Notes under the pieces: model-generated | The model's input: only the letters and a program-made list of their open reading frames with translations | Told to the model about the DNA's origin: nothing | The model's database searches: none | Virus record (IMG/VR): IMGVR_UViG_3300032240_001991 | Coordinates: 186,001 to 250,000 of that record | Length of the DNA: 64,000 nucleotides | Direction: 5' to 3' (one strand) | Part shown: positions 1-61,566 of the stretch, one piece after another | Layout: each line of letters begins with the position of its first letter | How positions within the stretch are numbered: the stretch's first letter is position 1 | Made by a program: the position numbers and the translations under genes

Positions 1-1
1 G

Positions 2-172
2 GCCCTTTGGTCTATGATTATAGTTGCAATAAGCGGATTTATAGGCAGATTCCTTTATCATCGAACAGGCTGGGAAATTCTATTTAAGTGGTGGCACATA
101 GTGCATTTACCTTTTGTAGGGATGCTAGTTTTAACAGCAATCATACATATTTTCTCAACATTCTATTATTAA
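2..172 (+). CDS. C-terminal fragment (runs off window start) of a His-rich inner-membrane protein, cytochrome b-like partner of porin-cytochrome clusters
   Basis: Hand translation of frame 2: ALWSMIIVAISGFIGRFLYHRTGWEILFKWWHIVHLPFVGMLVLTAIIHIFSTFYY*. Two hydrophobic helices, a WHxxHxP motif and a further intramembrane His; directly upstream of the porin and cytochromes. Confidence 0.7.
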   Translation, partial: ALWSMIIVAISGFIGRFLYHRTGWEILFKWWHIVHLPFVGMLVLTAIIHIFSTFYY

Positions 173-188
173 TGTACATATATTATCC

Positions 189-196
189 TATAAATA
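189..196 (+). promoter_or_regulatory. T4-type late promoter motif TATAAATA
   Basis: Exact TATAAATA in the 53-nt gap, 30 nt upstream of the GTG at 226. AT-rich background makes chance matches possible. Confidence 0.45.
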
Positions 197-225
197 GATA
201 AAAATCTGTCTATAGAGGGAATATT

Positions 226-2415
226 GTGACGCCACAGGCTGTAATAGATTCTACAAATTTTAATGATCTATTTGATGATTTAAATTTTACATCTACTCTG
301 AACAGCCTATTGGATAGTGATCTTGGTGTTCAAGATACGCTTAATAAATTAAAAACTCAAAAAGTATTACCTAAAGAAAATCTTAATTCTTTATTAGAAG
401 AAAATAAAGTTATAACAGATAAAACAGTATTTGTTACAAAAAAACCGCAAAAGAAAAGTAAGACTTTATCTAGGTCAATTGCAGTTATATTAGGGTTAAC
501 ATCTTACGCCGGATATTTTAATTTTAATAATACAGAGCTAGTATCTATACCTGTACCTACTCCAGCAGAACAAAAAAAAACTAATCAAATACCTTTTAAG
601 TTTACTAAACCAATTGTAGAAAATACTCGTACAACAACTCATATTGGTCCTAAAGATATTACTTCTATAGAAACAACAGATAATACTCCAGAACTAGTTC
701 AGCCTACGGTCCAAGAAACTCAAGAAGATCAACAACCAAAAATTTTTTTAGATACTCGAGATCCTCAAATATTAATAGACGAAGCTAGAGCATTATTAAT
801 TAGTGGACCTGAAAATTACGAACAAGCAATAACCAATTTACGAAGTGTTATTTTAAGTCAACCGTTAAAAAGTGATTACGCAAAAACTGCACACGAAATG
901 TTAGGATACGCCTACGAAAAATCAAAAAAGTGGGATAAAGCAATGGGAGAGTATTCTAAGTATCTTGCACTTTATCCAGAAGATAACGAAGATAGAACTA
1001 GAGTCAAACAAAGACTAATGGCGCTAGAAATTTTTAAAACTCCTGAAGGGTTTGATATTAATAAAAGCGCAATAAAACAAAAACCAAGAGAAGGCGATAA
1101 ACAGGAACTAAGTGGTTCAATTTCAGAGTATCTTTACTCAGATTCAAACTCAGATGAATTGAAATTCCTGCAATGGAACAATAAACAGATTAATTCGATT
1201 ACTGGAATTAATCTATTATATCAATGGCAACATAATCAATATTCTCTTACATCTAAAATAAGATTAACAGAAGTAAGAGATTTAACCGGTAAGAAAGGAA
1301 ATAGGAATAATTTAGGATTAGCTTATGTTGATTTTGACGATTCTTGGAAAGAGTATAATATAAGAGCAGGAAGACAATCTCCCGAAGCAGGTGCAATAAG
1401 TAAATTTGATGGTCTTTCTACAACAATTTCTTTAAACGATAAAATTAAAATTAAAGCTGCTGCTGGATCCCCTTACGTTGGCCCAGGAAACAACACAAAT
1501 AGAAAATTTATAGGAACAGAAATATCATACGAACGAGGACCATCTTTAACTCTAGGTGGATATTTAAATAGAGGAACTGCAGATGGATTTTTAGAACGAA
1601 TGGCAATTGGCACCGAAGTATGGTATCATAAAGGAGCAAATACAGGAATTCTAAGAACTGAATACGATACCTTATACCACTCATGGAATTCTATAACTTT
1701 TCAAGGAAGTACAGGAGTTAAAGGATATCGTTTATTTGGTGTTTATGAAAAAAGAAGAAGCCCAATGCCATTTGGAGACGTTGGATTAGGAATAGGATTA
1801 TTAAGTCCTGATAAACAGGTATATAATTCAGTAGGAAGTTTGGTCAGTGAATCAGGATTAAGTTCTTCAGAGATCTATCATTACATTTCTGATACAACCC
1901 CAACTGCTTCAGCTTTGGTATTAGGTATTAGTAAGCCTTTAAATGAAGATTGGACCGCTACTTTTAATTGGCAGAAAACAAATTTATCAACTACACCAGG
2001 GTTTGATCTAACTCCAAACTTTGATAGTGTCCCTGTACAGGTAGGACAAAATAATAACTATTCTTATAATTTACATTTAAGAGCGGAAAATTTTAAAATA
2101 GCAGGCAATACATTTGAAATAGTAATGAATCAAACCACTGGACAGATACAAGCTCGATATATTACACTTGCAGACAGTTTTAAATTTAATGGTAAAAAAG
2201 ATATATTTTTTGGTATTTTAAGAGCGGACGAATATGCGCAAAGTTATGGCACAAATAAATCTTTAAGTTTAATCTTAAGAGAAATACATTCTCTAAGTGA
2301 TCAAACCTCAATTGAAACCCAGTACGGTATATCTATAGGTAAAAACATTTATCTAAATCAATCTTTACCTAATACTAATCAAAATTTCTATATTGGAATA
2401 CGTCATGATTTTTAA
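226..2415 (+). CDS. TPR-containing outer-membrane beta-barrel (porin) protein
   Basis: Hydrophobic segment near residues 85-100; TPR-like HEMLGYAYEKSKKWDKAMGEYSKYLALYPE; long C-terminal region of alternating amphipathic strands ending in IGIRHDF (terminal Phe, BAM-type signal). Confidence 0.75.
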   Translation: MTPQAVIDSTNFNDLFDDLNFTSTLNSLLDSDLGVQDTLNKLKTQKVLPKENLNSLLEENKVITDKTVFVTKKPQKKSKTLSRSIAVILGLTSYAGYFNFNNTELVSIPVPTPAEQKKTNQIPFKFTKPIVENTRTTTHIGPKDITSIETTDNTPELVQPTVQETQEDQQPKIFLDTRDPQILIDEARALLISGPENYEQAITNLRSVILSQPLKSDYAKTAHEMLGYAYEKSKKWDKAMGEYSKYLALYPEDNEDRTRVKQRLMALEIFKTPEGFDINKSAIKQKPREGDKQELSGSISEYLYSDSNSDELKFLQWNNKQINSITGINLLYQWQHNQYSLTSKIRLTEVRDLTGKKGNRNNLGLAYVDFDDSWKEYNIRAGRQSPEAGAISKFDGLSTTISLNDKIKIKAAAGSPYVGPGNNTNRKFIGTEISYERGPSLTLGGYLNRGTADGFLERMAIGTEVWYHKGANTGILRTEYDTLYHSWNSITFQGSTGVKGYRLFGVYEKRRSPMPFGDVGLGIGLLSPDKQVYNSVGSLVSESGLSSSEIYHYISDTTPTASALVLGISKPLNEDWTATFNWQKTNLSTTPGFDLTPNFDSVPVQVGQNNNYSYNLHLRAENFKIAGNTFEIVMNQTTGQIQARYITLADSFKFNGKKDIFFGILRADEYAQSYGTNKSLSLILREIHSLSDQTSIETQYGISIGKNIYLNQSLPNTNQNFYIGIRHDF

Positions 2416-2935
2416 AATTTTATCTACAATCTTTCTTTTATTTTTTTCTTATCAAATTTCAGCAGCAGAGTGCACTGCATATGAAAAATTACATCCATTA
2501 TGGCCATTAACCGGAGCTCATTTAAGTACAGGAAAGTGTACGACCTGTGCATATTGCCATATTCCTGCAGGTAACCCTGTATGGATAGGAACTCCAAGAA
2601 TGTGTATTTCCTGTCATAACGGAGATCCTAGATGGACAACAGTAGGAAGGAGCGCCAAACATTTACCTACGTTGTTATTAGATTGCGCAGGTTGTCATAA
2701 TACCTTAGCTTTTAATAACAAAAACGGAATAACTCAGATGATGATACACAATACTGGATACCCTACGGTCATGTGTAAAGGTTGCCATAATGGTATGTAT
2801 ACCAGCTATGGTGCACAAGGAATGTCAAATGATCATCCTAAAACGGTAACTAGGAATGGTGTAAAAATAACCGTAGCTGCTGTTGACTGTAATTATAGTG
2901 GTTGCCATAACCCTAACCGTAATTCATTTAATTAA
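2393..2935 (+). CDS. Secreted multiheme cytochrome c (4 CxxCH + 1 CX4CH)
   Basis: Signal peptide (start may be ATG 2405); motifs CAYCH, CISCH, CAGCH, CKGCH and CNYSGCH. Confidence 0.88.
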   Translation: MEYVMIFKILSTIFLLFFSYQISAAECTAYEKLHPLWPLTGAHLSTGKCTTCAYCHIPAGNPVWIGTPRMCISCHNGDPRWTTVGRSAKHLPTLLLDCAGCHNTLAFNNKNGITQMMIHNTGYPTVMCKGCHNGMYTSYGAQGMSNDHPKTVTRNGVKITVAAVDCNYSGCHNPNRNSFN

Positions 2936-2943
2936 TATAATCT

Positions 2944-2966
2944 ATGTAGATTTTTAAAATCTACAT
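2944..2966. repeat. Perfect 11-bp inverted repeat ATGTAGATTTT-T-AAAATCTACAT
   Basis: Between the two cytochrome genes, 3 nt upstream of TATAAATA; could be an operator or an RNA hairpin. Confidence 0.6.
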
Positions 2967-2969
2967 TTG

Positions 2970-2977
2970 TATAAATA
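2970..2977 (+). promoter_or_regulatory. T4-type late promoter motif TATAAATA
   Basis: Exact match upstream of the GAGGAG RBS (2988-2993) of the heptaheme gene. Confidence 0.45.
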
Positions 2978-3000
2978 ATGTATATTTGAGGAGAAGAATT

Positions 3001-3807
3001 GTGAATAAGTTTAAAAAGTTAATAACTTCAGTCACTGTAATGTTAGGTTTACTTTTTTCTTTTATTAGTGTGCCAACTGTTGTTACAGGAGCATTATTCT
3101 TTTCTCCTTCAGCAGAAGCTGCTGAATGTACGTTATATGAGACTATACACCCTAACTTTCCGTTAACTGGTGCTCACTTATCTACTGGTAAGTGTAGTAC
3201 GTGTGCGAGTTGCCATGCTGGTGGAATATTCCTAGGAACTCCAAAAATCTGTGCAACCTGTCACAACGGAAATCCTAGTGGTCAAATTTCATCTGCTACT
3301 GTAGGGAAATCAGCATTGCATCCTCCAATTGGAACTACAAGTTGCGATTCTTGCCATAATACTACTAGCTTTACTGCTACATGGAAAATGAATCACGCTA
3401 GCGTGAGTGGACAAAGATGCGACAGCTGTCATAACGGTTCCTACACCACTTATGCGGCCATGGGTAAACCAAGAGATCACATTCCAACCACTGCAGACTG
3501 CGGTACTTGCCACGTTACTAAAGACACTAGCTCACACAATAGCGATGCTTGGGGCATGTCGCTTGCTGAAATACATCGTGGTATCACATCAGGCTGTGTT
3601 ACTTGCCATGACGGTGCGCACCATCCAGCACTAGGTAAGATAGACTATGCCCCCGGACATCCTAGCACCAGCGATGCCTGCGAAACTTGCCACAGCATTA
3701 ATAATACTTTCAAATGTGCGTCGTTGATTCATGACAAGATGTTTATGTATTCGTTAAAACAAGGCCTAGCAGGCTTAATTAAAACTTCAGATAAAAATCG
3801 AATATAA
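3001..3807 (+). CDS. Secreted heptaheme cytochrome c
   Basis: GTG start at 3001 follows GAGGAG (ORF track starts 2986). Signal peptide ending AEA-A; seven CxxCH: CASCH, CATCH, CDSCH, CDSCH, CGTCH, CVTCH, CETCH; extra His residues available as distal ligands. Confidence 0.9.
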   Translation: MNKFKKLITSVTVMLGLLFSFISVPTVVTGALFFSPSAEAAECTLYETIHPNFPLTGAHLSTGKCSTCASCHAGGIFLGTPKICATCHNGNPSGQISSATVGKSALHPPIGTTSCDSCHNTTSFTATWKMNHASVSGQRCDSCHNGSYTTYAAMGKPRDHIPTTADCGTCHVTKDTSSHNSDAWGMSLAEIHRGITSGCVTCHDGAHHPALGKIDYAPGHPSTSDACETCHSINNTFKCASLIHDKMFMYSLKQGLAGLIKTSDKNRI

Positions 3808-3821
3808 TCTATCTAATAACG

Positions 3822-3850
3822 GACGCCCCTTTTATGGGGCGTTCTCTTAT
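3822..3850 (+). terminator. Rho-independent terminator
   Basis: GACGCCCC-TTTTAT-GGGGCGTT followed by a T-rich tail, just after the cytochrome genes. Confidence 0.75.
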
Positions 3851-3919
3851 TTCAAATTTTGATTGCTAAAAAGATTGCATCTTTAATAAAATAGTATATA
3901 TTAGCAAAAATAAAAAAAT

Positions 3920-4014
3920 GCCCCTGTAGTTTAATGGTAGAACACCTGTTTTATACACAGGCTTTGGCGCCAGATTAGCGCACAGTGTCGGTTCGAGTCC
4001 GGCCGGGGGTACCA
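3920..4014 (+). tRNA. tRNA-Ile(UAU) with long variable arm
   Basis: Acceptor GCCCCTG/CGGGGGT + A-CCA; anticodon arm CCTGT-TTTATAC-ACAGG; ~25-nt variable region containing a GCGC/GCGC stem; T arm GTCGG-TTCGAGT-CCGGC. Confidence 0.8.
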
Positions 4015-4072
4015 GATTCTTACAATGCTAAAATATTAATTCTTAAATACCAGCACTAGAAAAGGAGTTATC

Positions 4073-4693
4073 ATGCAATCAACTAGATTAACCTGGCAAA
4101 CACAACAAGTTGGTAGGTTTATGTATCCCTATGCCTTTTGGGATAATTTTTTATCAGAAGATGAATTAAAGGCAATTGAACAGTTTTGCCTTACTAAGCC
4201 ATTAATAGATTCTATGACTATTGGCGGAGCAGAACAGGCTAACCTAACAGATGCCAGAAGATCTAAGAGTGTTATCTATGAATTTAATCCAGACATTTTC
4301 TGGATCTTTGATAGAATGAAGAGTATCACTGAGTATGTTAATTCTGAATGTTTTAACTTTGATCTATTAGGCTTTGATTATTTTCAATATGCCGAATATC
4401 AAGGGGAAGGATCACGGTATGAGTTTCATACTGATTTAATCTACGGTAACGATTTACCTCCTTATATGATATTTCCTCGAAAACTATCGTTTACTCTAGT
4501 TCTTAGTGACAATAGCGAATATACTGGTGGGGAATTACAATTTCAACCAGATACTCAAAATCCAGTTACACTTGATCAACGTAGAGGAAGAATTGTAGCA
4601 TTTCCGTCATGGGTACTGCACAGAGTATGTCCGTTAACATCAGGTACTAGAAGATCAATAGTCTGGTGGGCAACTGGACCTAAATTTAGGTAA
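4073..4693 (+). CDS. 2OG-Fe(II) oxygenase (prolyl-hydroxylase/PKHD type)
   Basis: HxD (FHTD), RKLSFTLVL..Y.GGEL, FPSWVLHRV and RRSIVWW..G motifs. Confidence 0.88.
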   Translation: MQSTRLTWQTQQVGRFMYPYAFWDNFLSEDELKAIEQFCLTKPLIDSMTIGGAEQANLTDARRSKSVIYEFNPDIFWIFDRMKSITEYVNSECFNFDLLGFDYFQYAEYQGEGSRYEFHTDLIYGNDLPPYMIFPRKLSFTLVLSDNSEYTGGELQFQPDTQNPVTLDQRRGRIVAFPSWVLHRVCPLTSGTRRSIVWWATGPKFR

Positions 4694-4699
4694 AAAATT

Positions 4700-5212
4700 A
4701 TGAGTAATCTACAGATTTTTAAAAATGTTTTACGACCAGAAACTCTAGCTGCTGTTTTAGAAGAAAGAACAAATTTCTTAGGACAACCAGTTTGGAGATG
4801 TAGCGATCATTTTTGGGGAGAAGAAATTAAAGTTGGCGTCACTGGAGTGGTTACTTCAACGATGTGCAGCCACAGAATAGGTGAAATGGTCAGAAACGAC
4901 ATATTGCACATTATGCCCCCTTGTACTACAATGGCGGTACAACATTATATGTGGCATAAGCATTCCGCAATTAGTAGTCATAATGATTGGGCGTATGCAT
5001 GGGCAGCTACAATTTACTTAAACGAAAACTGGAATTTAGATTGGGGTGGACTGTTCATGTGGCAAGATTCAGATAACGGAGAAATACACGGGCACGTTCC
5101 TGAATACAATAGCATGGCTCTTAATAAAGGCAAGGTTAATCATTTTGTTACTCCACTAAGTCCTTTAGCTCCAGAAAATAGAATTTCCTTACAAATCTGG
5201 GGTAAGGTATAA
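4700..5212 (+). CDS. 2OG-Fe(II) oxygenase
   Basis: HND, TIYLNENWNLDWGGLF, HFVTP and RISLQIW motifs. Confidence 0.8.
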   Translation: MSNLQIFKNVLRPETLAAVLEERTNFLGQPVWRCSDHFWGEEIKVGVTGVVTSTMCSHRIGEMVRNDILHIMPPCTTMAVQHYMWHKHSAISSHNDWAYAWAATIYLNENWNLDWGGLFMWQDSDNGEIHGHVPEYNSMALNKGKVNHFVTPLSPLAPENRISLQIWGKV

Positions 5213-5864: not shown

Positions 5865-7154
5865 ATGAAAGATTATAAAATTCAAGACATTGGGCTAGCC
5901 GCGTGGGGCCATAAAGAAATTGCTATCGCAGAAACTGAAATGCCAGGATTGGTTGCTATTCGAGAAGAATATCGATCACAACAGCCACTAAAAGGTGCTA
6001 GAATTGCAGGGTCATTACATATGACTATTCAGACTGCTGTTTTAATTAAAACTCTAGTAGAACTAGGTGCCAGTGTACGCTGGTCGAGTTGTAATATCTT
6101 TTCAACGCAAGATCATGCAGCAGCCGCAGTTGCAGACTTAGGTATTCCTGTGTTTGCTTGGAAAGGCGAAACAGAAGAAGAATATTGGTGGTGCATTGAA
6201 CAGACGTTAAAAGGACCTGATGGTTGGTCGCCTAACATGATCCTCGACGACGGCCACGACCTTACTTGGTATGTAATGAATAAGTGTCCACAGCTTGTTG
6301 ATAACATTGTAGGAGTTAGTGAAGAGACCACTACAGGAATACATCGTATTATTGAAGCTATTAATAGAGGTGCGTTTCCATTCCGTGCTATTAACGTTAA
6401 CGACAGTGTAACCAAAAGTAAGTTTGATAATTTATACGGTTGTAGAGAAAGCCTAGTTGATGCAATTAAACGCGCAACTGACGTTATGATTGCAGGTAAG
6501 ACCGCAGTCGTATGTGGGTTCGGCGACGTAGGTAAAGGCTCTGCAGAAGCACTACGTGCACTTAGTGCCCAGGTTTGGGTTACTGAAGTTGATCCTATTT
6601 GCGCACTACAAGCAGCAATGGAAGGTTATCGTGTAGTTACTATGGAATATGCTGCTGATAAGGCAGACATTTTTGTAACCGCTACGGGCAATATCAATGT
6701 TATTACACACGACCATATGCAGGCAATGAAAAATAATGCTATTGTTTGCAACATTGGACATTTTGATAACGAAATTGATATTGCTGGATTAAAGAAATAT
6801 ACCTGGGAAAATATTAAACCTCAGGTAGATCATGTCATCTTCCCAAATGGCAAGCGTATTATTATACTTGCTGAAGGTCGATTAGTTAACTTAGGTTGCG
6901 CTACTGGGCACCCTAGTTATGTAATGAGTAACTCATTTACTAATCAAGTATTAGCCCAAGTTGAATTATGGACTAATTCATCTGCTTATGAAAAAGGCAA
7001 ACTTTACATATTGCCAAAACATCTAGATGAAAAGGTAGCTAGGTTGCATTTAGCACAGATAGGTGCTACAATTACTACATTAACTAAGGAACAGGCTGAA
7101 TACATCGGTGTAACAGTTGATGGTCCATTTAAGTCTGATTCTTATAGATATTAA
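5865..7154 (+). CDS. ahcY: S-adenosyl-L-homocysteine hydrolase
   Basis: [67 protein letters not shown] motifs. Confidence 0.97.
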
Positions 7155-39892: not shown

Positions 39893-40645
39893 TTAATCAA
39901 AATCTTTATAAATCGATAAAATCTCCTTGACAACTGGATGTCTTTCAATGTCTTGTGTTTCAAACCAAACCATATCAACTAATTTATGGCTTTCTACTCC
40001 GTCGTATAGTTCTACGAAATCTAATAAACCATTTTCTCTTGGCCTATCTGCCTGATTTAAGTCTCCGGTTACAACCATTCTGCTATTTTCTCCAAGTCTA
40101 GTAAGTAGCATCTTCATTTGACTCGGTGTTGCATTTTGCATCTCGTCTGCTACTACAAATGCATTTTTGAAAGTACGACCACGCATGTATGCCAAAGGAC
40201 TGATTTCTATAATACCGTCATCTAACATCGATGCAATTTCTTTTGGATGATAATACTCTTCAAATACATCCATAATAGGACGGGTCCACGGTTCCATCTT
40301 TTGATTTAATGTACCAGGCAAAAACCCATGTTCTTCGTCTACACTTACTGCTGGCCTTGTGATAACAATCTTGCTAACCACCCCTTCTTTATATAATTTA
40401 ATGGCCATCTGTACACCTAACATAGTTTTACCTGTGCCCGCAGGCCCAATAGCAAAAACAATGTATTTTTTAGGATTTTTTAATAGTTCTAAGTAATTTT
40501 CTTGACTTATATTACGAGGAATTATCTGTACTTGTGTTTTTTTACGATACTTTTGCTTAAACTCTAGCAAATTCTGATTATCTTGTGAAAAACGAGGATC
40601 ATGATTTAAGTGGACTACTCGGTCTCTTCTCTTTGCTTTAGGCAA
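39893..40645 (-). CDS. phoH: PhoH-family ATPase
   Basis: GPAGTGKT, ITRPAV, GFLPG, LAYMRGRTF, DEMQN, TGDLNQ.D, IERHP.V. Confidence 0.95.
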   Translation of the reverse strand: MPKAKRRDRVVHLNHDPRFSQDNQNLLEFKQKYRKKTQVQIIPRNISQENYLELLKNPKKYIVFAIGPAGTGKTMLGVQMAIKLYKEGVVSKIVITRPAVSVDEEHGFLPGTLNQKMEPWTRPIMDVFEEYYHPKEIASMLDDGIIEISPLAYMRGRTFKNAFVVADEMQNATPSQMKMLLTRLGENSRMVVTGDLNQADRPRENGLLDFVELYDGVESHKLVDMVWFETQDIERHPVVKEILSIYKDFD

Positions 40646-43025: not shown

Positions 43026-43838
43026 ATGAGTGACCATTATAAAACTTTAGGCATTGACCGCACAGCTACCGCAGATGATATCAAAAAAGCTTATCGCAAA
43101 TTAGCGATGAAGTACCATCCTGACCGTGGCGGGGATCAGGCAGAATTTCAAAAAATTCAAGAAGCCTATTCTGTGTTAAGTGATCTTGAAAAAAAGAATC
43201 AATACGATAATCCTCAACAGTTCCATGGTCCTCCTCCAGGCTTTGAAGAAATGTTTAGAAATTTCTCGTTTAATGGTGGCATTAATATTGACGAACTGTT
43301 TGGCAGAGCAAGAACTGTTAGAAATCGAAATATTAATTTGCAAACTACAATATCTTTAGAAGACGCTTTTGCAGGAAAAGAACTTGTTGCAAATGTACAA
43401 CTTCCAAACAGTAAAGAGCACATTATTAATGTAAAGATTCCTGCTGGAATACAAGACGGAATGACATTGAGATTGAGAGGTATTGGCGATAGTACATTTG
43501 CAAATGTTCCGCCAGGTGATGTTCATTTAACTGTATCAGTAATGCCGCATCCTGAATTTCAAAGAAACGGTGACAATCTTTTTAAAGAAGTGCAAATTTC
43601 TGCATTTGATGCTATACTAGGTACAAGTTTATTAATTTCTACAATAGATAACAAAACCCTTAATGTAACTATACCTCCAGGTACTCAACCAGGAACAACA
43701 TTAAAGATTCATGGCTATGGCATGCCAAACGTTAATGATCCAAGATTTAAAGGACAATTACTGTTATCAGTAAAGGTTGTTATTCCAACAAACTTAACTG
43801 AAGAACAAAAAGTTACAATACAAAAATTAAGAACGTAA
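43026..43838 (+). CDS. dnaJ: DnaJ/CbpA-type co-chaperone (no Zn finger)
   Basis: YKTLG...IKKAYRKLAMKYHPDRGG J-domain; C-terminal IPPGTQPGT.L.I.G.GMP. Confidence 0.93.
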   Translation: MSDHYKTLGIDRTATADDIKKAYRKLAMKYHPDRGGDQAEFQKIQEAYSVLSDLEKKNQYDNPQQFHGPPPGFEEMFRNFSFNGGINIDELFGRARTVRNRNINLQTTISLEDAFAGKELVANVQLPNSKEHIINVKIPAGIQDGMTLRLRGIGDSTFANVPPGDVHLTVSVMPHPEFQRNGDNLFKEVQISAFDAILGTSLLISTIDNKTLNVTIPPGTQPGTTLKIHGYGMPNVNDPRFKGQLLLSVKVVIPTNLTEEQKVTIQKLRT

Positions 43839-43864
43839 ATATCTGAGAGTTAAAAGGAAATAGA

Positions 43865-46138
43865 ATGTTAGAACCAGATAAAGAATTGTCAAGCATGTTT
43901 GAACATGCAATACATACAGCAATTGAATATAATCACGAATACATTACATTGGAACATTTTCTTTACGGAATGATTTCTAACGATTCGTTTAGCGAAATGC
44001 TTACACAGTACGGTGCAGACGTACCAGGATTAAAAAATAATTTAGAAAATTATATCGATACTAATTTAGCGTCAATTGCAACTTTGCAAAAAAACGAAAG
44101 GCCACAAAAAACAAATACTGTAGAAAGAATGCTTAACAGAGCATTTACACAGGTACTATTCAGTGGGCGTCAGCAAATCTCTCCTATAGATTGTTTGATT
44201 AGTTTTTTCTCAGAAAAGAACAGTCATGCAAACTTTTTTATGAGAAAGGCTAAGATTGAAAAAGAAACATTTTTGGAATTTGCTATGAATAATAGTTCTT
44301 CGTCTGAAGAAAAAGAACAGTCTACAGTAAACGAAAAACAGATCGAAAAGTTTTTAATTCAGTACTGTGCTAATCTAACAGAAAAAGCCAAAAACAAAAA
44401 AATTGACCCGGTAATTGGTCGAGAAAAAGAAATTGAGGATTTAATATTGATCCTTGCTCGTCGTAATAAGAGCAATGTTATGCTTATTGGCGACCCGGGT
44501 GTAGGCAAAACAGCTATTGCTGAAGGAGTTGCTCGTAAAATTGTTGAAGGCGACGTTCCTACTTTTATACAGAATCATAGTGTATATTCACTGGATATCA
44601 GTGCAATGTTGGCGGGTAGTAAGTACCGCGGTGATTTTGAAGAGCGTTTGAAAAATGTTCTTACCGCATTAGAAAAGAAAAAGAATTGCATTCTTTTTAT
44701 TGATGAAGCTCACATGATGAGCGGTGCTGGAGCGGTCAATGGCAATAGTAACGATATGAGTAATATGCTCAAACCTGCACTTGCTAAAGGTAGCATTAAA
44801 GTTATAGCTAGCACAACCTGGGAAGATTTCCGCAAGAACTTTGAAAAAGATCGTGCACTTATGCGGCGATTCCAGCGAGTTATGGTCAACGAACCAAATG
44901 AAGAAACTGCTATTAAGATCGTTAAGGGTGTAAAAAAGTATTACGAAAAGCATCACAAGGTAAAGATTACTAATCAAGCAGTGATTGACAGCGTAAAATA
45001 CAGTATTAAGTATATTTCAGATAAAAAATTACCTGATAAGGCATTGGATCTTATTGATTGTGCTAGTGCAAGATTTAAATTGCGTGACGAAGACGGGGGC
45101 GTTGTTGACCACGACGAAATTGTTTTTGAAGTTGCAAAGATTACAGGGTTGCCACTAGATCAAATTGCTGCCAAAGAAAGCAATAATCTTAAGGATCTTG
45201 AAAAAAACATGCGGGCAAAAGTGTATGGTCAAGATAAAGCCATCGAAGCATTGCTTGATAAGATCTTTATTGCACAGGCGGGGCTAAAATCAGTCAATCG
45301 TCCAATTGGTAATTTCTTGTTTGTTGGCCCAACTGGTGTTGGAAAAACTGAAGCGGCGAAACAACTTGCAGCCAACATGGGAGTAAAGTTGATTCGATTT
45401 GATATGAGTGAATATCAAGAACAACATTCAGTAGCTAAATTTATTGGTAGCCCCCCAGGATATGTTGGGTTTGATGATAATGCAGGACAGTTGATTACAC
45501 GTCTACAGGAAAATCCAAACGGAATCTTACTGTTTGATGAAGTTGAAAAGGCACACCCTAGTGTGTTAACTATTCTACTTCAGTTAATGGATAATGGATT
45601 TGTTACTGGTAGTAATGGAAAAACTGCAGACGGTCGTAATGCTATCATTATCATGACTAGTAACTTAGGTGCAGCAGATTCTGAAAAGAATTCAGTTGGA
45701 TTTGGTAGTTTAGAACGAGATAGTGATCCTAAGGATGCTGTTAACAAGTTCTTTGCACCAGAATTTCGTAATCGTTTAGACGGAACTATTAAGTTTGATC
45801 GACTAGATCATAGTACTATGGCATTAATTGTTAAGAAATTTATCGACGATCTTAACGGTTTGGTCAAAGATCGAAATGTACATGTTCGGTTAAGTACCGA
45901 AGCTGTTGAACATTTGATCAAAAAAGGATTTGATCGAAAGATGGGAGCTCGTCCGCTACAGCGTACAATTGATGAACACATAAAAAAGCCGTTAAGTAAG
46001 GAAATACTATTTGGTAATCTTATTAACGGAGGTATTGTTGAAATTACCATTGTAGATGACGCGCTTACCTTTAAATTTGTAGATGTATTGCCAATTAAAG
46101 AAATAAAAGAAAATGAGCATCAAAGTTCTAGCAACTAA
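43865..46138 (+). CDS. clpA: ClpA-type double AAA+ unfoldase
   Basis: HEYITLEH, DPVIGRE.E, GDPGVGKTAIAEG, GSKYRGDFEER, LPDKALDLID, GPTGVGKTE, IGSPPGYVGFD, VGFG ClpP-docking loop, MGARP. Confidence 0.95.
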   Translation: MLEPDKELSSMFEHAIHTAIEYNHEYITLEHFLYGMISNDSFSEMLTQYGADVPGLKNNLENYIDTNLASIATLQKNERPQKTNTVERMLNRAFTQVLFSGRQQISPIDCLISFFSEKNSHANFFMRKAKIEKETFLEFAMNNSSSSEEKEQSTVNEKQIEKFLIQYCANLTEKAKNKKIDPVIGREKEIEDLILILARRNKSNVMLIGDPGVGKTAIAEGVARKIVEGDVPTFIQNHSVYSLDISAMLAGSKYRGDFEERLKNVLTALEKKKNCILFIDEAHMMSGAGAVNGNSNDMSNMLKPALAKGSIKVIASTTWEDFRKNFEKDRALMRRFQRVMVNEPNEETAIKIVKGVKKYYEKHHKVKITNQAVIDSVKYSIKYISDKKLPDKALDLIDCASARFKLRDEDGGVVDHDEIVFEVAKITGLPLDQIAAKESNNLKDLEKNMRAKVYGQDKAIEALLDKIFIAQAGLKSVNRPIGNFLFVGPTGVGKTEAAKQLAANMGVKLIRFDMSEYQEQHSVAKFIGSPPGYVGFDDNAGQLITRLQENPNGILLFDEVEKAHPSVLTILLQLMDNGFVTGSNGKTADGRNAIIIMTSNLGAADSEKNSVGFGSLERDSDPKDAVNKFFAPEFRNRLDGTIKFDRLDHSTMALIVKKFIDDLNGLVKDRNVHVRLSTEAVEHLIKKGFDRKMGARPLQRTIDEHIKKPLSKEILFGNLINGGIVEITIVDDALTFKFVDVLPIKEIKENEHQSSSN

Positions 46139-58229: not shown

Positions 58230-58296
58230 TATTGCCTAAATAAAGTTGTACAATATGTACATGTCATCCACGACAATAACTCGGAGAATTAAAATA

Positions 58297-59139
58297 ATGA
58301 ATGATAAAACTTGGACACTCCCTGTAGAAGAAGATCCCGCTACTGGAGACAGCATTATCATCTTCCCACCTGATCTTCTTGAGGAAACCGGATGGAAAGA
58401 AGGAGATACATTAAACTGGATCGAAAATAACGACGGATCATTTACACTACAAAGGAAAGACATGAAACCAATAAGTTCTCAAATTAGAGAAAGATTAGAA
58501 CAAGCTAAACATCGTTATCACAGCAATGATAACATTTCTGCTTTTATAAACGACGGCGAACTTGAACAACTGCAAGAAGAAGTTGCTCTTAAATTAGAAG
58601 ATGTACTACAAAGTCTTGTAATTGATACAGTTCACGATCACAATACACAAGATACTGCAAATCGAGTAGCTAAGATGTTTATTAAGGAAACATTTAGCGG
58701 GCGTTACCGTCCAGTTCCTAAGGTTACAGCATTTCCTAACATGGGCTATAAGAGTCTTTATACTACAGGTCCAATTAGTATTCGTAGCACCTGTGCTCAT
58801 CACTTTCAAAATATTGTAGGACGTTGTTGGGTAGGCATTGTTCCTGAAGGCGAAGTAATTGGTCTTAGTAAGTTTAATCGAATCGTTCATCATATTTGCG
58901 AACGTCCGCAGATTCAAGAAGAGATGACTACGCAGATTGCAGAGGCACTTAAGGAATACGCTAAAACTGAGCATATCGCCGTTGTAGTCAAAGCAGAGCA
59001 TCATTGTATGACCATGCGCGGTGTACGTGAGCACGAAAGTGATATGACTACTGCAATTATGCTGGGCGCATTTAGTACAGATCCTGCACTAAAGCAAGAA
59101 TTCTATGATATTTGTCTTTCAATGAAGGGTCATCGGTAA
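58297..59139 (+). CDS. folE: GTP cyclohydrolase I with in-frame N-terminal AbrB/MazE-like domain
   Basis: TANRVAKMF, IRSTCAHHF, IGLSKFNRIV, RPQIQEEMT, AEHHCMTMRGV; N-terminal IIIFPPDLLEETGWKEGDTLNW. Likely start ATG 58297 (GGAG), internal ATG 58462 (AAGGA). Confidence 0.93.
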   Translation: MNDKTWTLPVEEDPATGDSIIIFPPDLLEETGWKEGDTLNWIENNDGSFTLQRKDMKPISSQIRERLEQAKHRYHSNDNISAFINDGELEQLQEEVALKLEDVLQSLVIDTVHDHNTQDTANRVAKMFIKETFSGRYRPVPKVTAFPNMGYKSLYTTGPISIRSTCAHHFQNIVGRCWVGIVPEGEVIGLSKFNRIVHHICERPQIQEEMTTQIAEALKEYAKTEHIAVVVKAEHHCMTMRGVREHESDMTTAIMLGAFSTDPALKQEFYDICLSMKGHR

Positions 59140-59140
59140 T

Positions 59141-59701
59141 ATGAAAAAATTAACAATCAATGATCGTATGCTTAAGAATCTAGTGGCTAAGATCTGTAGA
59201 GATATTACTAATAGTGGATGGCGTCCTGAATATGTTGTTGGTATTAGTCGTGGAGGGCTATTGCCTGCGATTATGATCAGTCATTATTTTAATGTGCCTA
59301 TGAAACCGTTAACGGTTAGCTTAAGAGACGGCGGAGAATGTGTTAGTGACTTAGGAATGGCTGAAGATGCATACGGGCACTGCGATCGAACTATTGATAT
59401 TTTAGAAGAAGATCCAATGGATTTAATCAATGAAGGCATGCCTGCTGATATTTTGATTGTTGACGACATTAATGATACTGGCGCTACATTTAACTGGATC
59501 ATGAAAGACTGGCCAGCAGGATGCTATCCGTCAGATCCTGTTTGGAATGAAGTTTGGGGCAATACTGTACGATTCGCTGTTCTTGTAGATAATCTTGCCA
59601 GCAAGTGCGATATAGGAATGTATTATCACGGAATGGAAATTAACAAAGAAGAAGAAGATGTTTGGGTTGAGTTCCCTTGGGAGAATTGGTGGCAAGAATG
59701 A
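59141..59701 (+). CDS. Type I purine phosphoribosyltransferase
   Basis: VVGISRGGLLPA..ISH, LIVDDINDTGATF PRPP loop, WVEFPWE. Confidence 0.88.
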   Translation: MKKLTINDRMLKNLVAKICRDITNSGWRPEYVVGISRGGLLPAIMISHYFNVPMKPLTVSLRDGGECVSDLGMAEDAYGHCDRTIDILEEDPMDLINEGMPADILIVDDINDTGATFNWIMKDWPAGCYPSDPVWNEVWGNTVRFAVLVDNLASKCDIGMYYHGMEINKEEEDVWVEFPWENWWQE

Positions 59702-60150
59702 TTTTAAAACTCTTAGAAAAACTAGGACGAAAACGCATTATAATGGATAGGATTAATAATAAACCCTATTTAGAGCGTTATTATCTTTTTTTAAAAGAAC
59801 GAAAAAAATTTCCCTTTAACATCTTTCTACATAAATTCTTAAAAGGAGACCCTGACGATGTACACGATCATCCCTGGCCTTATGCAACGCTTATACTTAA
59901 AGGTGGCTATTATGAATGGATTCCCCAATTTCGTCAAGACGGTACAAAATCTTGTGAAGTTCGCTACTGGCGTGGGCCCGGACATTTTCGCATTTGCAGC
60001 CCTAATAGCTACCATCGAATTGAACTAAAAGAAGGCGTCACCTGTTGGACATTGTTTATGCCTGGACCTCATCGCAGAGATTGGGGATTCCTTGTTAAAG
60101 ATCAATGGGTGCAGCATGAAAAATATCTTATATCAAGGGCTAAAGCATGA
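59698..60150 (+). CDS. Cupin-like protein
   Basis: [39 protein letters not shown]. Confidence 0.7.
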
Positions 60151-61169
60151 GAATTGAAACAGATATTAAATTAGATTTCAAAGACGTATTAATCCGTCCT
60201 AAGCGTAGTACATTGGCTAGCCGAAAAGATGTAAGTTTATATAGGAATTACACTTTCAAATGGAGCCAAAAAGAATGGGGCGGTGTCCCTATTATGGCTG
60301 CAAATATGGACGGCGTTGGAACATTTGCAATGGGCAATGCTTTGCATGAATATGAGATGTTTACCTGCCTTGTAAAGAGTTACGAAAAAGAAGACTGGGA
60401 TAGCTATTACGACCCCAGTCTGACTGCTGTAAGTACCGGTATTAGTTCTTGGGATTACGTCAAACTACAAAATATTTTAGAAAATTTTGAATTAGATTTT
60501 ATCTGCATTGACGTTGCTAATGGATACAGCGAACACTTTGGTGATTTTGTTGCTAAGGTTAGAAAAGAGTATCCAACAAAAACTATTATTGCAGGTAATG
60601 TTGTTACCGCAGACATGACACAGGAGTTAATCTTACGTGGGGCAGACATTGTTAAAGTTGGCATTGGTCCCGGTAGTGTATGTACTACTCGTATTCAAAC
60701 CGGCGTTGGATATCCTCAGCTCTCAGCCATCATCGAATGTGCAGACGCTGCTCATGGCCTTGGCGGTCATATTATTGCAGATGGGGGATGTACTTGCCCA
60801 GGTGATGTCGCTAAGGCATTTGGGGGCGGTGCTGATTTTGTAATGCTAGGAGGAATGCTGGCTGGACACGACGAAGGCGGAGGAGAAATTAAAGACGGAA
60901 TGGTCACCTTTTATGGTATGAGTTCTAATACCGCAATGGAAAAAAATAATGGTAGTGTTGCAGAATATCGTAGTAGTGAAGGGCGCACAGTTCAAGTTCT
61001 GTACCGCGGACCTGTAAAGAATACGGTCAATGACCTGCTAGGCGGATTACGTAGTGCCTGTACGTATGTAGGAGCACCATCTCTTAAACAGTTAAGTAAA
61101 TGCACTACATTTATTAGAGTGAATGACACGCATAATCGTGTTTACGAATCAAATACTGTAAGGAAATAA
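60147..61169 (+). CDS. guaC: GMP reductase
   Basis: [72 protein letters not shown]. Confidence 0.95.
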
Positions 61170-61171
61170 TT

Positions 61172-61561
61172 ATGGATAATATTTTTAATGGACCAGATAC
61201 ATTGTCAGCTGCAGATGTTCCTTGGACAAACCCTATAAAAGAAGACTTTCAAATAAAAGTATTTCAAGATAAATTTCCAGTTACTTCAGGTCACTTGCTT
61301 TTTGTACCAAAGTATAATAGTATTCCAGTATTAATGGAAGCTATCGAGGATGCAATTCGACATGGTAAAAATATGGTCCTTAATCATGAATATGATGGAT
61401 TCAACATTGGAATTAATTATGGAGAGGCCGCTGGTCAAACTATTCAATGGCCTCATGTCCATCTCATTCCACGAAGACTAGGCGATGTTCCGGATCCTAC
61501 CGGAGGAGTAAGGCATGTTATTCCAGGTAAAGGAAATTATCGCGATCCAAATTTTAGGTAA
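61172..61561 (+). CDS. HIT-family nucleotide hydrolase
   Basis: FPVTSGHLLFVPK, GFNIGIN.GEAAGQT..WPHVHLIPRR.GD. Confidence 0.9.
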   Translation: MDNIFNGPDTLSAADVPWTNPIKEDFQIKVFQDKFPVTSGHLLFVPKYNSIPVLMEAIEDAIRHGKNMVLNHEYDGFNIGINYGEAAGQTIQWPHVHLIPRRLGDVPDPTGGVRHVIPGKGNYRDPNFR

Positions 61562-61566
61562 ACATT

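What the first reader, a model, noticed from the sequence alone, without database searches (positions are those of the whole stretch)
2..3807. Phage-encoded porin-multiheme cytochrome electron conduit
Seen: four consecutive + strand genes closed by one terminator, namely a His-rich inner-membrane protein tail (WHIVHLP...IIHI), a 729-aa TPR + beta-barrel ending in Phe, and two signal-peptide cytochromes with 4(+1) and 7 CxxCH motifs. Established: an inner-membrane cytochrome b-like protein, periplasmic/extracellular multiheme cytochromes and a porin together form the porin-cytochrome complexes (MtrAB/MtoAB/PCC3-type) that metal-oxidising and metal-reducing Proteobacteria use for extracellular electron transfer. 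Inference: a jumbo phage carries a whole trans-envelope electron wire as an auxiliary metabolic module. It could let the infected cell dump or harvest electrons on minerals under O2 limitation. No heme-attachment (Ccm) genes are in this window, so the host system would be needed. I know of no described phage with such a conduit.
Basis: partly seen in the sequence, partly recalled or inferred. Interest (0 to 1): 0.93.

Follow-up and report, generated by a model that had tools for sequence, protein, structure and literature searches.

The report
Jumbo phage carries miniature porin-cytochrome conduit
A 327-kb freshwater phage, and more than twenty other large phage contigs, carry a shrunken copy of the bacterial "PCC3" gene cluster thought to wire the cell interior to outside minerals, so infection may make the host electrically connected to its surroundings.

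Summary
Four co-directional genes end at one strong terminator. They encode the tail of a 158-aa five-helix inner-membrane protein (IMP), a 729-aa TPR plus 22-strand beta-barrel, a 5-haem cytochrome c (cytA) and a 7-haem cytochrome c (cytB).

The window is the interior (about 186-250 kb) of a 326,658-bp IMG/VR phage contig with polB, tail fibres and 20 tRNAs, so misassembly is excluded.

The module is a miniature relative of the bacterial PCC3 cluster (He et al. 2017).
- The barrel aligns end to end with PCC3 porins (hhalign 100%, E 5e-53).
- The IMP keeps the diagnostic SGXXG and two WX3HX13H motifs.
- cytB matches the N-terminus and repeats of the giant outer PCC3 cytochrome.
- It differs in haem number (5 and 7, against about 21 and 10-85), in lacking the 21-haem periplasmic cytochrome, in gene order and in a truncated IMP.

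The miniature form occurs on at least 22 viral contigs (GC 34-56%) and is under purifying selection (dN/dS 0.04-0.21). It forms its own clade; the only cellular member found is in a Methylophilaceae MAG.

It is absent from 50,697 GenBank phages, and I found no paper describing it. Haem loading, surface exposure and electron flow are untested.

The parts
2..172 (+). 3' end (last 56 codons) of the gene for a 158-aa, five-helix inner-membrane protein (IMP). It is a PCC3-type putative di-haem-b protein. This piece holds the second WX3HX13H motif (WHIVH...13...H).
   Evidence: Full gene at L001:1712-2188, identical DNA. It is 38-45% identical to bacterial PCC3 IMPs, with W72, H76, H90, S113, G114, G117, W133, H137 and H151 invariant. 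The AF2 model has 5 helices, pLDDT 81.
226..2415 (+). Gene for the 729-aa outer-membrane protein: variable N-terminal tether, TPR domain and 22-strand beta-barrel (PCC3-type porin).
   Evidence: hhalign against 12 canonical PCC3 porins: probability 100%, E 4.6e-53, 528 columns running from the TPR to the C-terminal GxRxDF. AF2 model; fold matches are all OM barrels; 1222 family members in the 1.84-billion-protein library.
226..741 (+). N-terminal 172 residues of the barrel protein, predicted disordered, with one hydrophobic helix (aa 81-94, nt 466-507). Either a long signal sequence or an inner-membrane tether.
   Evidence: pLDDT below 50 over residues 1-172, helix at 81-94. In homologues this region is replaced by a plain signal peptide, a zinc ribbon plus hydrophobic helix, an AMIN domain or (canonical PCC3) a SPOR domain.
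763..1035 (+). TPR domain (aa 180-270), expected to face the periplasm.
   Evidence: Pfam TPR_2/TPR_16 and NCBIfam BamD-like hits; five helices in the model; conserved LGYAYEK...YLALYPE...DRTRVRQRLM block.
1096..2409 (+). 22-strand beta-barrel (aa 291-728) with a helical insert at aa 536-557 and a C-terminal aromatic beta-signal (...FYIGIRHDF).
   Evidence: DSSP on the AF2 model. Foldseek PDB hits: MOMP, FimD/PapC ushers, OccD, AlgE, E down to 2e-12. Amphipathic period-2 pattern in the alignment.
2405..2935 (+). cytA: Sec-exported pentahaem cytochrome c (176 aa; 4 CxxCH + CX4CH; 5 further conserved His). A paralogue of the N-terminal half of cytB.
   Evidence: Cytochrome_C7 hit at 3e-5. 48% identical to cytB residues 32-169. 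67-80% identical among phages. dN/dS 0.04-0.13. Start overlaps the barrel stop.
3001..3807 (+). cytB: Sec-exported heptahaem cytochrome c (268 aa; 7 CxxCH + 7 conserved distal His; about 33 residues per haem) with a conserved 30-aa C-terminal tail.
   Evidence: Cytochrome_C7 8.6e-10, Paired_CXXCH 5e-7. All motifs invariant in 14 homologues. 34-35% identical to the N-terminus and the repeats of a 43-haem PCC3 outer cytochrome. dN/dS 0.04-0.13.
3821..3854 (+). Intrinsic-terminator-like hairpin plus T-rich tail that closes the operon.
   Evidence: 9-bp stem with 7 G-C pairs and a 6-nt loop, then TCTTATTTCA. It is the only + strand terminator-like site in 1-4200.

Best explanation
The phage encodes a compact, self-contained version of the PCC3-type porin-cytochrome system. 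It most likely builds a trans-envelope electron conduit in the infected cell.

Shown:
- The genes are phage-borne.
- Three of the four proteins are homologous to PCC3 parts, and the fourth (cytA) is a paralogue of cytB.
- The haem motifs and ligands are conserved.
- The barrel fold is predicted with confidence.
- The genes are under purifying selection and recur in many phages.

Inferred mechanism:
1. The five-helix IMP binds two b haems through its two HX13H pairs, as in ferric-reductase and cytochrome-b domains. It exchanges electrons with the quinone pool and passes them to the periplasmic face.
2. The soluble pentahaem cytA carries the electrons across the periplasm.
3. The heptahaem cytB, the equivalent of the first module of the giant outer PCC3 cytochrome, sits in or through the 22-strand barrel. 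The barrel's periplasmic TPR domain and N-terminal tether hold the assembly in place.
4. Host Sec, the host cytochrome c maturation system and host BAM do the export, haem attachment and barrel insertion.

I favour outward flow to Fe(III), humic substances or other extracellular acceptors. That would keep respiration and ATP supply going in oxygen-poor lake water through a long jumbo-phage infection. The direction is not established.
For: Phage identity:
- polB phrog_262 (1e-193), tail-fibre and baseplate hits, 20 tRNAs.
- polB is 47-51% identical to the Atu_ph07 and Phosso jumbo phages.
- 326,658-bp IMG/VR contig.

PCC3 homology:
- About 25 proteobacterial loci show the published PCC3 order: IMP, then an 18-24-haem cytochrome, then a 13-76-haem cytochrome, then the porin. 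Each part is hit by the phage profiles. This matches the description in PMC5566968.
- Barrel hhalign E 4.6e-53 over TPR and barrel.
- IMP motifs WFDIH-X13-H, SGFIG and WHIVH-X13-H are present.
- cytB aligns to the N-terminus and repeats of the outer cytochrome.

Wire-like cytochromes: about 31-33 residues per haem, and all haems have a conserved second His.

Coupling: the barrel and cytA genes overlap, and one terminator closes the operon.

Recurrence and constraint:
- At least 22 IMG/VR contigs plus ENA contigs of 197-330 kb, with unrelated flanking genes.
- The IMP is linked in three different positions.
- dN/dS 0.04-0.21.
- The phage barrels form one clade with 100% support.

Ecological fit: putative porin-cytochrome genes occur in Methylotenera and Methylobacter of anoxic humic lake water (PMC6344600).
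Against: - No experiment exists for PCC3 itself, let alone for this version.
- The 21-haem periplasm-spanning cytochrome is absent. Twelve c haems (roughly 110-120 A if laid end to end; my estimate) cannot bridge both membranes as a rigid wire, so a diffusing step must be assumed.
- The phage IMP lacks the roughly 125-aa cytoplasmic loop of bacterial IMPs. Its fold matches to NOX, cytochrome b561 and b6 are not significant (E 0.5 or worse).
- Neither cytochrome has a lipobox or any proven surface location.
- The barrel protein has an odd 80-aa N-terminal extension before its hydrophobic segment, and how it is exported is unexplained.
- No complex model was run, so threading of cytB through the barrel is untested.
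- The host is unknown.
Confidence: 0.6

Rival explanations
1. The same hardware runs inward. The conduit takes electrons from extracellular Fe(II), reduced humics or minerals into the quinone pool, giving the infected cell an extra energy source.
For: PCC3 was found in, and proposed for, neutrophilic Fe(II) oxidisers, with electron flow drawn from outside to the quinone pool (PMC5566968; PMC9900912). Other freshwater jumbo phages carry donor-side genes such as amoC.
Against: PCC3 is spread widely among bacteria not known to oxidise iron. All 12 c haems appear bis-His ligated. From general knowledge of c7- and c3-type cytochromes, that usually means low potentials, better suited to export. Nothing in the sequence fixes the direction.
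Confidence: 0.25
2. The conduit serves iron supply, not energy. It reduces extracellular or periplasmic Fe(III) to soluble Fe(II) to feed iron-dependent phage enzymes.
For: The IMP carries the ferric-reductase-domain haem motif. Two 2OG-Fe(II) oxygenases follow the module directly. A FecR-domain gene and an Asp/Arg hydroxylase lie upstream. L100 also has a 2OG-Fe(II) oxygenase next to its module.
Against: The neighbours are not conserved across module-bearing phages. No Fe(II) transporter is linked. 2OG oxygenases are common phage genes in any case.
Confidence: 0.12
3. The cytochromes work only in the periplasm, as a redox buffer, detoxifier or partner of a host reductase. The barrel is a separate channel for a small redox-active solute, not a sheath for a cytochrome.
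For: No lipobox and no proven surface exposure. A helical insert at aa 536-557 and low-confidence loops could plug the lumen. The fold matches are to substrate channels and ushers, not to MtrB.
Against: Barrel and cytochrome genes are adjacent in every one of more than 30 phage loci and about 25 bacterial loci, and they overlap here. A 22-strand barrel is far wider than a solute channel needs to be.
Confidence: 0.12
4. The TPR-barrel is an exopolysaccharide or fibre export pore of the BcsC/PgaA/AlgE kind, tied to the CsgG/CsgF-like genes upstream. Its place beside the cytochromes is incidental.
For: TPR plus barrel is the architecture of those exporters. AlgE is among the fold matches. CsgF- and CsgG-like genes lie 7-8 kb upstream.
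Against: The profile search of PDB sequences found only generic TPR matches; no solved barrel sequence of any kind matched. No synthase is linked. The linkage to cytochromes is universal, and full-length homology to PCC3 porins is strong. The CsgG and CsgF genes are absent from the other module loci.
Confidence: 0.03
5. Artefact: bacterial DNA wrongly joined to a phage contig, or decaying passenger genes.
For: The module lies at the window edge, and GC over 1-2000 is slightly low (0.32).
Against: Three assemblies agree. The module is interior to the 327-kb contig. Many independent phage contigs carry it. Purifying selection is strong. All haem motifs are intact.
Confidence: 0.01

Closest known systems
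PCC3 porin-cytochrome cluster of Proteobacteria (He, Barco, Emerson & Roden 2017, PMC5566968; Gallionellaceae survey PMC9900912)
   Same: The porin is homologous over TPR and barrel (E 4.6e-53). The IMP is homologous, with 5 helices, SGXXG and two WX3HX13H motifs. cytB is homologous to the N-terminus and repeat units of the outer multihaem cytochrome. All genes are clustered and co-directional.
   Different: The cytochromes have 5 and 7 haems instead of about 21 (periplasmic) and 10-85 (outer). The 21-haem cytochrome is absent. The gene order is IMP-porin-cytA-cytB instead of IMP-cytochrome-cytochrome-porin. The IMP lacks the roughly 125-aa cytoplasmic loop. The porin lacks the SPOR domain. 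The genes are carried by phages and form a separate, well-supported clade.
Three-gene cluster in a Methylophilaceae MAG (GCA_013141125.1, contig JABFRO010000001.1; L019/L024)
   Same: The same miniature format: a 7-haem cytochrome (53% identical to cytB), a 573-aa TPR-barrel (30% identical, E 2e-65) and a 5-haem cytochrome (50% identical to cytA). It is sister to the phage clade (support 87).
   Different: It is chromosomal, beside an IS200-type transposase and toxin-antitoxin genes. The order is cytB-barrel-cytA. No IMP lies within 8 kb. The barrel has a plain signal peptide.
MtrCAB / MtoAB / PioAB porin-cytochrome complexes
   Same: The same design logic: a multihaem cytochrome sheathed by an outer-membrane barrel, fed from the inner membrane.
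   Different: No sequence relationship was detected: no PF11854 or decahaem-family hit, and no MtrB or MtrA chain in the PDB sequence searches. 22 predicted strands against the 26 I recall for MtrB. 5 and 7 haems against 10. A TPR domain is present.
Multihaem cytochromes on other mobile elements: the NapC/NirT cytochrome of freshwater amoC jumbo phages (bioRxiv 10.64898/2026.06.18.733297) and cytochromes plus Ccm on Methanoperedens jumbo extrachromosomal elements (PMC13444090)
   Same: They set the precedent that large mobile elements carry c-type multihaem cytochromes to alter host electron flow.
   Different: Those are single quinol-dehydrogenase-type or archaeal cytochromes. None comes with its own outer-membrane barrel and inner-membrane partner, and none is related to PCC3.

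Membership tests
PCC3 porin-cytochrome cluster | Outer-membrane beta-barrel porin of the PCC3 family encoded next to multihaem cytochrome genes | tested here: met
   The phage barrel profile hits the porins of about 25 PCC3-organised bacterial loci (E 1e-19 to 1e-55). hhalign gives 100%, E 4.6e-53, 528 columns. 22-strand model.
PCC3 porin-cytochrome cluster | Conserved inner-membrane protein with 5 helices, SGXXG on helix 4 and WX3HX13H on helices 3 and 5 | tested here: met
   WFDIH-X13-H, SGFIG and WHIVH-X13-H are present. 38-45% identical to PCC3 IMPs, with all four His invariant. 5 helices in the model. It is shorter (158 aa against about 300) because the cytoplasmic loop is missing.
PCC3 porin-cytochrome cluster | Outer ('extracellular') repeat-rich cytochrome with very many haems (10-85, median 34) | tested here: not met
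   cytB is homologous to the N-terminus and repeats of such cytochromes but has only 7 haems. cytA, with 5, is its paralogue.
PCC3 porin-cytochrome cluster | Periplasmic cytochrome with about 21 (18-27) haems | tested here: not met
   Absent from all phage loci. cytB matches that protein only weakly (E 4e-9 over single motifs).
PCC3 porin-cytochrome cluster | Gene order IMP, periplasmic cytochrome, outer cytochrome, porin | tested here: not met
   Here the order is IMP, porin, cytA, cytB. In other phages the IMP lies after cytB or is missing.
PCC3 porin-cytochrome cluster | Carries electrons across the envelope | not testable with these tools
   Never shown for any PCC3. It needs expression, haem staining and electrochemistry.
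MtrAB/MtoAB/PioAB | MtrB/PioB-family porin (PF11854; 26 strands, as I recall it) | tested here: not met
   No Pfam or NCBIfam hit. No MtrB chain at E up to 10 in the PDB profile search. 22 strands predicted, and MtrB is not among the top 50 fold matches.
MtrAB/MtoAB/PioAB | MtrA/DmsE-family decahaem periplasmic cytochrome | tested here: not met
   5 and 7 haems. The only hits are c7/c3-type domains.
Geobacter OmbB-OmaB-OmcB type complex | Outer cytochrome is a lipoprotein; octahaem periplasmic partner | tested here: not met
   There is no lipobox: both mature proteins begin A|AEC after an Ala-X-Ala-type site. Haem counts are 5 and 7. Sequence homology to OmbB, OmaB and OmcB was not tested, because no reference sequences were at hand.
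Cyc2 fused cytochrome-porin | One polypeptide with an N-terminal monohaem domain fused to a barrel | tested here: not met
   The barrel protein has no CxxCH, and the cytochromes are separate genes.
TPR-porin exopolysaccharide exporters (BcsC, PgaA, AlgK/AlgE) | TPR plus a 16-18-strand barrel encoded with a polymer synthase | tested here: not met
   The architecture looks alike, and AlgE appears as a generic fold match. But only generic TPR sequences matched in the PDB sequence search, no synthase is linked, and 22 strands are predicted.
Tailed jumbo phage (over 200 kb) | Phage replication and virion genes on one contig over 200 kb | tested here: met
   polB, clamp loader, tail fibre and baseplate hits and PhoH. 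20 tRNAs. Contig of 326,658 bp. polB nearest to Phosso, Atu_ph07 and Rak2-like phages.

The most novel reading that the evidence does not exclude
Large freshwater phages have evolved and spread their own minimal trans-envelope electron conduit: about 1,330 residues, two b haems and twelve c haems in four small genes. Nearly all known copies are phage-borne. Viral infection could therefore switch extracellular electron transfer on in bacteria that lack it, or rewire it in those that have it. That would make phages direct players in iron and humic redox cycling. It would also provide the smallest natural porin-cytochrome system for bioelectrochemical engineering.
Probability: 0.45. Interest if true: 0.92.

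Novelty: new variant of a known kind. Interest (0 to 1): 0.86.

Why it matters
Extracellular electron transfer has been treated as a cellular trait, and auxiliary phage genes as single enzymes. Here a complete-looking, multi-compartment respiratory device travels on phage genomes, conserved and diversified across many lineages.

If it works, three things follow:
1. Virus-infected cells become a distinct class of electroactive particle in stratified, humic or iron-rich lakes.
2. PCC3, a widespread system that has never been tested, gains a small and tractable model. Cytochromes of 5 and 7 haems are far easier to express and to solve than ones of 21-85 haems.
3. Phages would prove able to carry outer-membrane, periplasmic and inner-membrane parts that must be assembled by host Sec, Ccm and BAM machinery within one infection cycle.

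Tried and rejected
- DNA similarity of 1-3900 to GenBank phages: none.
- PHROGs for the four proteins: no family.
- Genome scan with barrel peptide patterns: 10 pattern hits, none confirmed. Broader barrel alignments were too divergent for the pattern tool. The scan worked only with the cytochrome alignment.
- PDB sequence search with the barrel profile: only generic TPR matches.
- IMP fold search: the top hits are di-haem-b membrane proteins (NOX5, SpNOX, cytochrome b561, b6), but none is significant, so I count it as inconclusive.
- BFVD viral fold library: only generic phage porins.
- Host inference from the AdoHcyase gene: hundreds of 80-85% identical metagenomic homologues, none with an organism name. 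The host stays unresolved. Methylophilaceae is only the nearest cellular relative of the module, not a host call.
- Conserved neighbours: the upstream genes (coiled-coil protein, DUF4329, CHASE2 cyclase) and the downstream 2OG oxygenases have no homologues in the other module-bearing loci, so I left them out of the module.
- CcmF tblastn against the window: nothing.
- Plasmids: one weak cytochrome c3 hit only.
- No complex prediction was possible with the tools.

Full report
**What is there**

The first 3.85 kb of the window hold four + strand ORFs.

ORF 2..172 is the end of a gene cut by the window edge. Two other assemblies of the same DNA give the whole 158-aa protein, which I call the IMP: a Logan contig (L001) and the IMG/VR contig (L005).

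ORF 226..2415 encodes 729 aa. Pfam and NCBIfam see only a TPR stretch at residues 197-255.

The next two ORFs are c-type cytochromes. The first, cytA, most likely starts at ATG 2405, which overlaps the barrel stop codon by 11 nt. It has four CxxCH motifs plus CNYSGCH. The second, cytB, most likely starts at GTG 3001, behind a GAGGAG Shine-Dalgarno. It has seven CxxCH motifs.

A hairpin with a 9-bp stem, 7 G-C pairs and a T-rich tail lies at 3821-3844, 14 nt after the cytB stop.

No other ORF of 50 aa or more in any frame of the 64-kb window contains a CxxCH. The cluster of eleven motifs is therefore not chance.

**It is phage DNA, not a chimera**

The window has a T4-type polB (phrog_262, 1e-193), tail-fibre and baseplate proteins, a clamp loader, PhoH, DnaJ, a ClpB-like protein and 20 tRNA genes. 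Nearly everything is on one strand, at GC 32-41%.

Its polB is 51% identical to that of Sinorhizobium phage Phosso, 47% to Agrobacterium phage Atu_ph07 and 43% to Rak2-like jumbo phages.

The barrel gene maps to position 186,226 of IMGVR_UViG_3300032240_001991, a contig of 326,658 bp. The window is therefore the interior of a jumbo-phage contig.

The stretch across the suspected junction is also present in an ENA assembly and a Logan assembly.

**The module recurs in many phages**

Homologues of the barrel (40-53% identical) are all metagenomic. On the long contigs they are always followed by the cytochromes, in unrelated phage contexts:
- a 330-kb contig, beside a GH19 lysozyme-like gene and a ribonucleotide reductase;
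- a 197-kb contig, beside dCMP deaminase, a T7-type kinase and a ligase.

Two scans of IMG/VR found the module on 22 viral contigs of up to 369 kb, with local GC from 34 to 56%.

The core is the barrel plus cytB. cytA is usually present. The IMP is linked in three different arrangements: upstream here, and after cytB in L014/L082 and in L075.

cytA is a paralogue of the first half of cytB (48% identical). Its fifth haem site varies from CX2CH to CX6CH among phages.

All seven CxxCH motifs and seven further His of cytB are invariant in 14 homologues. cytA likewise has five extra His. Both have about 31-33 residues per haem.

Pairwise dN/dS among phages is 0.13-0.21 for the barrel and 0.04-0.13 for the cytochromes in unsaturated pairs. 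The genes are therefore maintained by selection.

**What family it belongs to**

A scan of 185,579 species genomes with the cytB alignment returned 49 proteobacterial loci. I searched their ORFs with profiles of the phage proteins.

About 25 loci showed one fixed order:
1. an inner-membrane protein of 270-420 aa, hit by the phage IMP (E 1e-21 to 1e-35);
2. a cytochrome of about 520 aa with 18-24 haems, usually 21;
3. a giant cytochrome with 13-76 haems, hit very strongly by the cytB profile;
4. a protein of 720-860 aa, hit by the phage barrel profile (E 1e-19 to 1e-55).

This is the "PCC3" cluster that He et al. defined by comparative genomics (PMC5566968). They describe a porin, an outer cytochrome (median 34 haems), a periplasmic cytochrome (median 21) and an IMP of about 300 aa. 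That IMP has five helices, SGXXG on helix 4 and WX3HX13H on helices 3 and 5.

The phage IMP has all three motifs: WFDIH-X13-H, SGFIG and WHIVH-X13-H. It aligns at 38-45% identity, with all four His invariant, but lacks the roughly 125-aa cytoplasmic loop.

Profile-profile comparison of the phage barrel family with 12 canonical PCC3 porins gives probability 100% and E 4.6e-53. It covers 528 columns, from the TPR to the C-terminal GxRxDF.

cytB aligns at 34-35% with the N-terminus (residues 21-199) and with the successive repeats of a 43-haem PCC3 outer cytochrome. It aligns only weakly with the 21-haem one.

Canonical PCC3 porins carry SPOR, TPR and barrel. That explains the SPOR-, AMIN- or SH3-bearing distant members among the 1222 hits of the exhaustive profile search.

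**Structure**

The AlphaFold2 model of the 729-aa protein has four regions:
- a disordered N-terminal 172 residues with one hydrophobic helix (81-94);
- five TPR helices (180-270);
- 22 beta strands (291-728), with pLDDT mostly 85-93;
- a short helical insert (536-557).

Every top PDB fold match is an outer-membrane barrel: MOMP, FimD/PapC ushers, OccD/OprD and AlgE, with E down to 2e-12 and low TM-scores. The fold class is therefore clear, but there is no close solved relative, and MtrB is not among the top 50.

The IMP models as five helices with pLDDT 81. Its best fold matches are NOX5, SpNOX, cytochrome b561 and cytochrome b6. None is significant.

**Evolution**

In a maximum-likelihood tree of 77 barrels, the canonical bacterial PCC3 porins form one clade (support 100) and the miniature forms another (support 100).

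Within the miniature clade, all barrels close to the window's form a tight group (support 100, long stem). That group is sister (support 87) to the one cellular example: a Methylophilaceae MAG.

That MAG has cytB-like (53% identical), barrel (30%, E 2e-65) and cytA-like (50%) genes next to an IS200-type transposase.

I looked up four deeper members of the miniature clade. All sit in phage-like contexts, with GP38, Phage_gp49_66, NUMOD3, NUDIX and HNH genes and many small ORFs. The small format therefore looks mainly phage-borne.

**How it most likely works**

Shown: homology, motifs, fold and linkage.

Inferred, in four steps:
1. The IMP binds two b haems and links the quinone pool to the periplasmic face.
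2. cytA shuttles electrons across the periplasm.
3. cytB occupies the barrel.
4. The TPR domain and the N-terminal tether position the complex.

Host Sec, host cytochrome maturation and host BAM would be needed. No Ccm or haem-synthesis gene was seen in the ORFs I scanned.

The direction of flow is not determined. I lean to export, to Fe(III) or humic acceptors in oxygen-poor water. The reason is that every c haem appears bis-His ligated, and such haems usually have low potentials; that rests on general knowledge, not on a test. Putative porin-cytochrome genes have been reported in Methylotenera and Methylobacter of anoxic humic lake water (PMC6344600).

Weak points:
- The 21-haem cytochrome is missing.
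- The IMP is truncated.
- The N-terminal extension of the barrel protein is unexplained.
- There is no evidence on surface exposure.
- The host is unknown.
- PCC3 itself has never been tested.

**Novelty**

Neither the barrel nor cytB has any tblastn match in 50,697 GenBank phage records.

Eight full-text searches found no description of a phage-borne porin-cytochrome module.

The nearest precedents are a NapC/NirT cytochrome in freshwater amoC jumbo phages and cytochromes plus Ccm on archaeal Methanoperedens elements.

I file it as a new variant of a known, still hypothetical, kind. It is PCC3-related, but it fails three of the five structural criteria for PCC3 membership: the haem count of the outer cytochrome, the presence of the 21-haem cytochrome and the gene order. 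It is also carried by phages.

Noticed in passing
window 3920-4014: tRNA-Ile (anticodon TAT) is 95 nt long, well above normal tRNA length. It is the first of 20 tRNA genes packed into 3.9-15.4 kb. It may hold an intron, or the call may be off.
   Followed up: no
upstream of the window on the same phage contig (ENA listing; L005:1-5947): An envelope and signalling gene block precedes the module: Asp/Arg hydroxylase, CsgF-like and CsgG-like curli-secretion genes, a FecR-domain protein and a CHASE2-guanylate/adenylate cyclase. A DUF4329 lipoprotein gene follows, and its stop overlaps the IMP start. None has a homologue in the other module-bearing loci.
   Followed up: partly
window 4073-5212 and 5865-7154: Two 2OG-Fe(II) oxygenases follow the module directly. 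After them comes an S-adenosylhomocysteine hydrolase with hundreds of 80-85% identical homologues on unnamed metagenomic contigs, some over 300 kb.
   Followed up: partly
window 58246-62421: GTP cyclohydrolase I, a phrog_9582 dehydrogenase and a radical-SAM protein lie together. This may be a 7-deazaguanine (queuosine-type) base-modification cluster.
   Followed up: no
window 2944-2966: A perfect AT-only 10-bp inverted repeat (ATGTAGATTT / AAATCTACAT, 3-nt loop) sits between cytA and cytB. It may be an attenuator or an RNA-processing site.
   Followed up: no
window 3001-3807 and homologues (alignment A5): Three cysteines outside the haem motifs are invariant in the cytB family: AEC at the mature N-terminus, GKC three residues before haem 1, and FKC near the C-terminus. 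A conserved C-terminal tail of about 30 aa follows the last haem.
   Followed up: no
L045, L048, L052: Nearly identical canonical PCC3 clusters sit on contigs binned as Candidatus Planktophila lacus (Actinomycetota), Janthinobacterium lividum and an uncultured proteobacterium. The actinobacterial label is probably a binning error.
   Followed up: no
window 39893-40645 (- strand); 43026-46138: PhoH is the only large gene on the minus strand. A DnaJ and a 757-aa ClpB-like AAA+ protein (phrog_4871, 4.5e-252) lie side by side, so the phage carries its own chaperone pair.
   Followed up: no
barrel homologues P0006, P0008, P0014, P0016, P0020; L092:2872-5253: The N-terminal module in front of the TPR-barrel is swapped among relatives: a plain signal peptide, an acidic extension plus hydrophobic helix, a zinc ribbon (PF13717/PF13719) plus helix, AMIN, or SPOR. 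The region may work as an interchangeable envelope anchor.
   Followed up: partly
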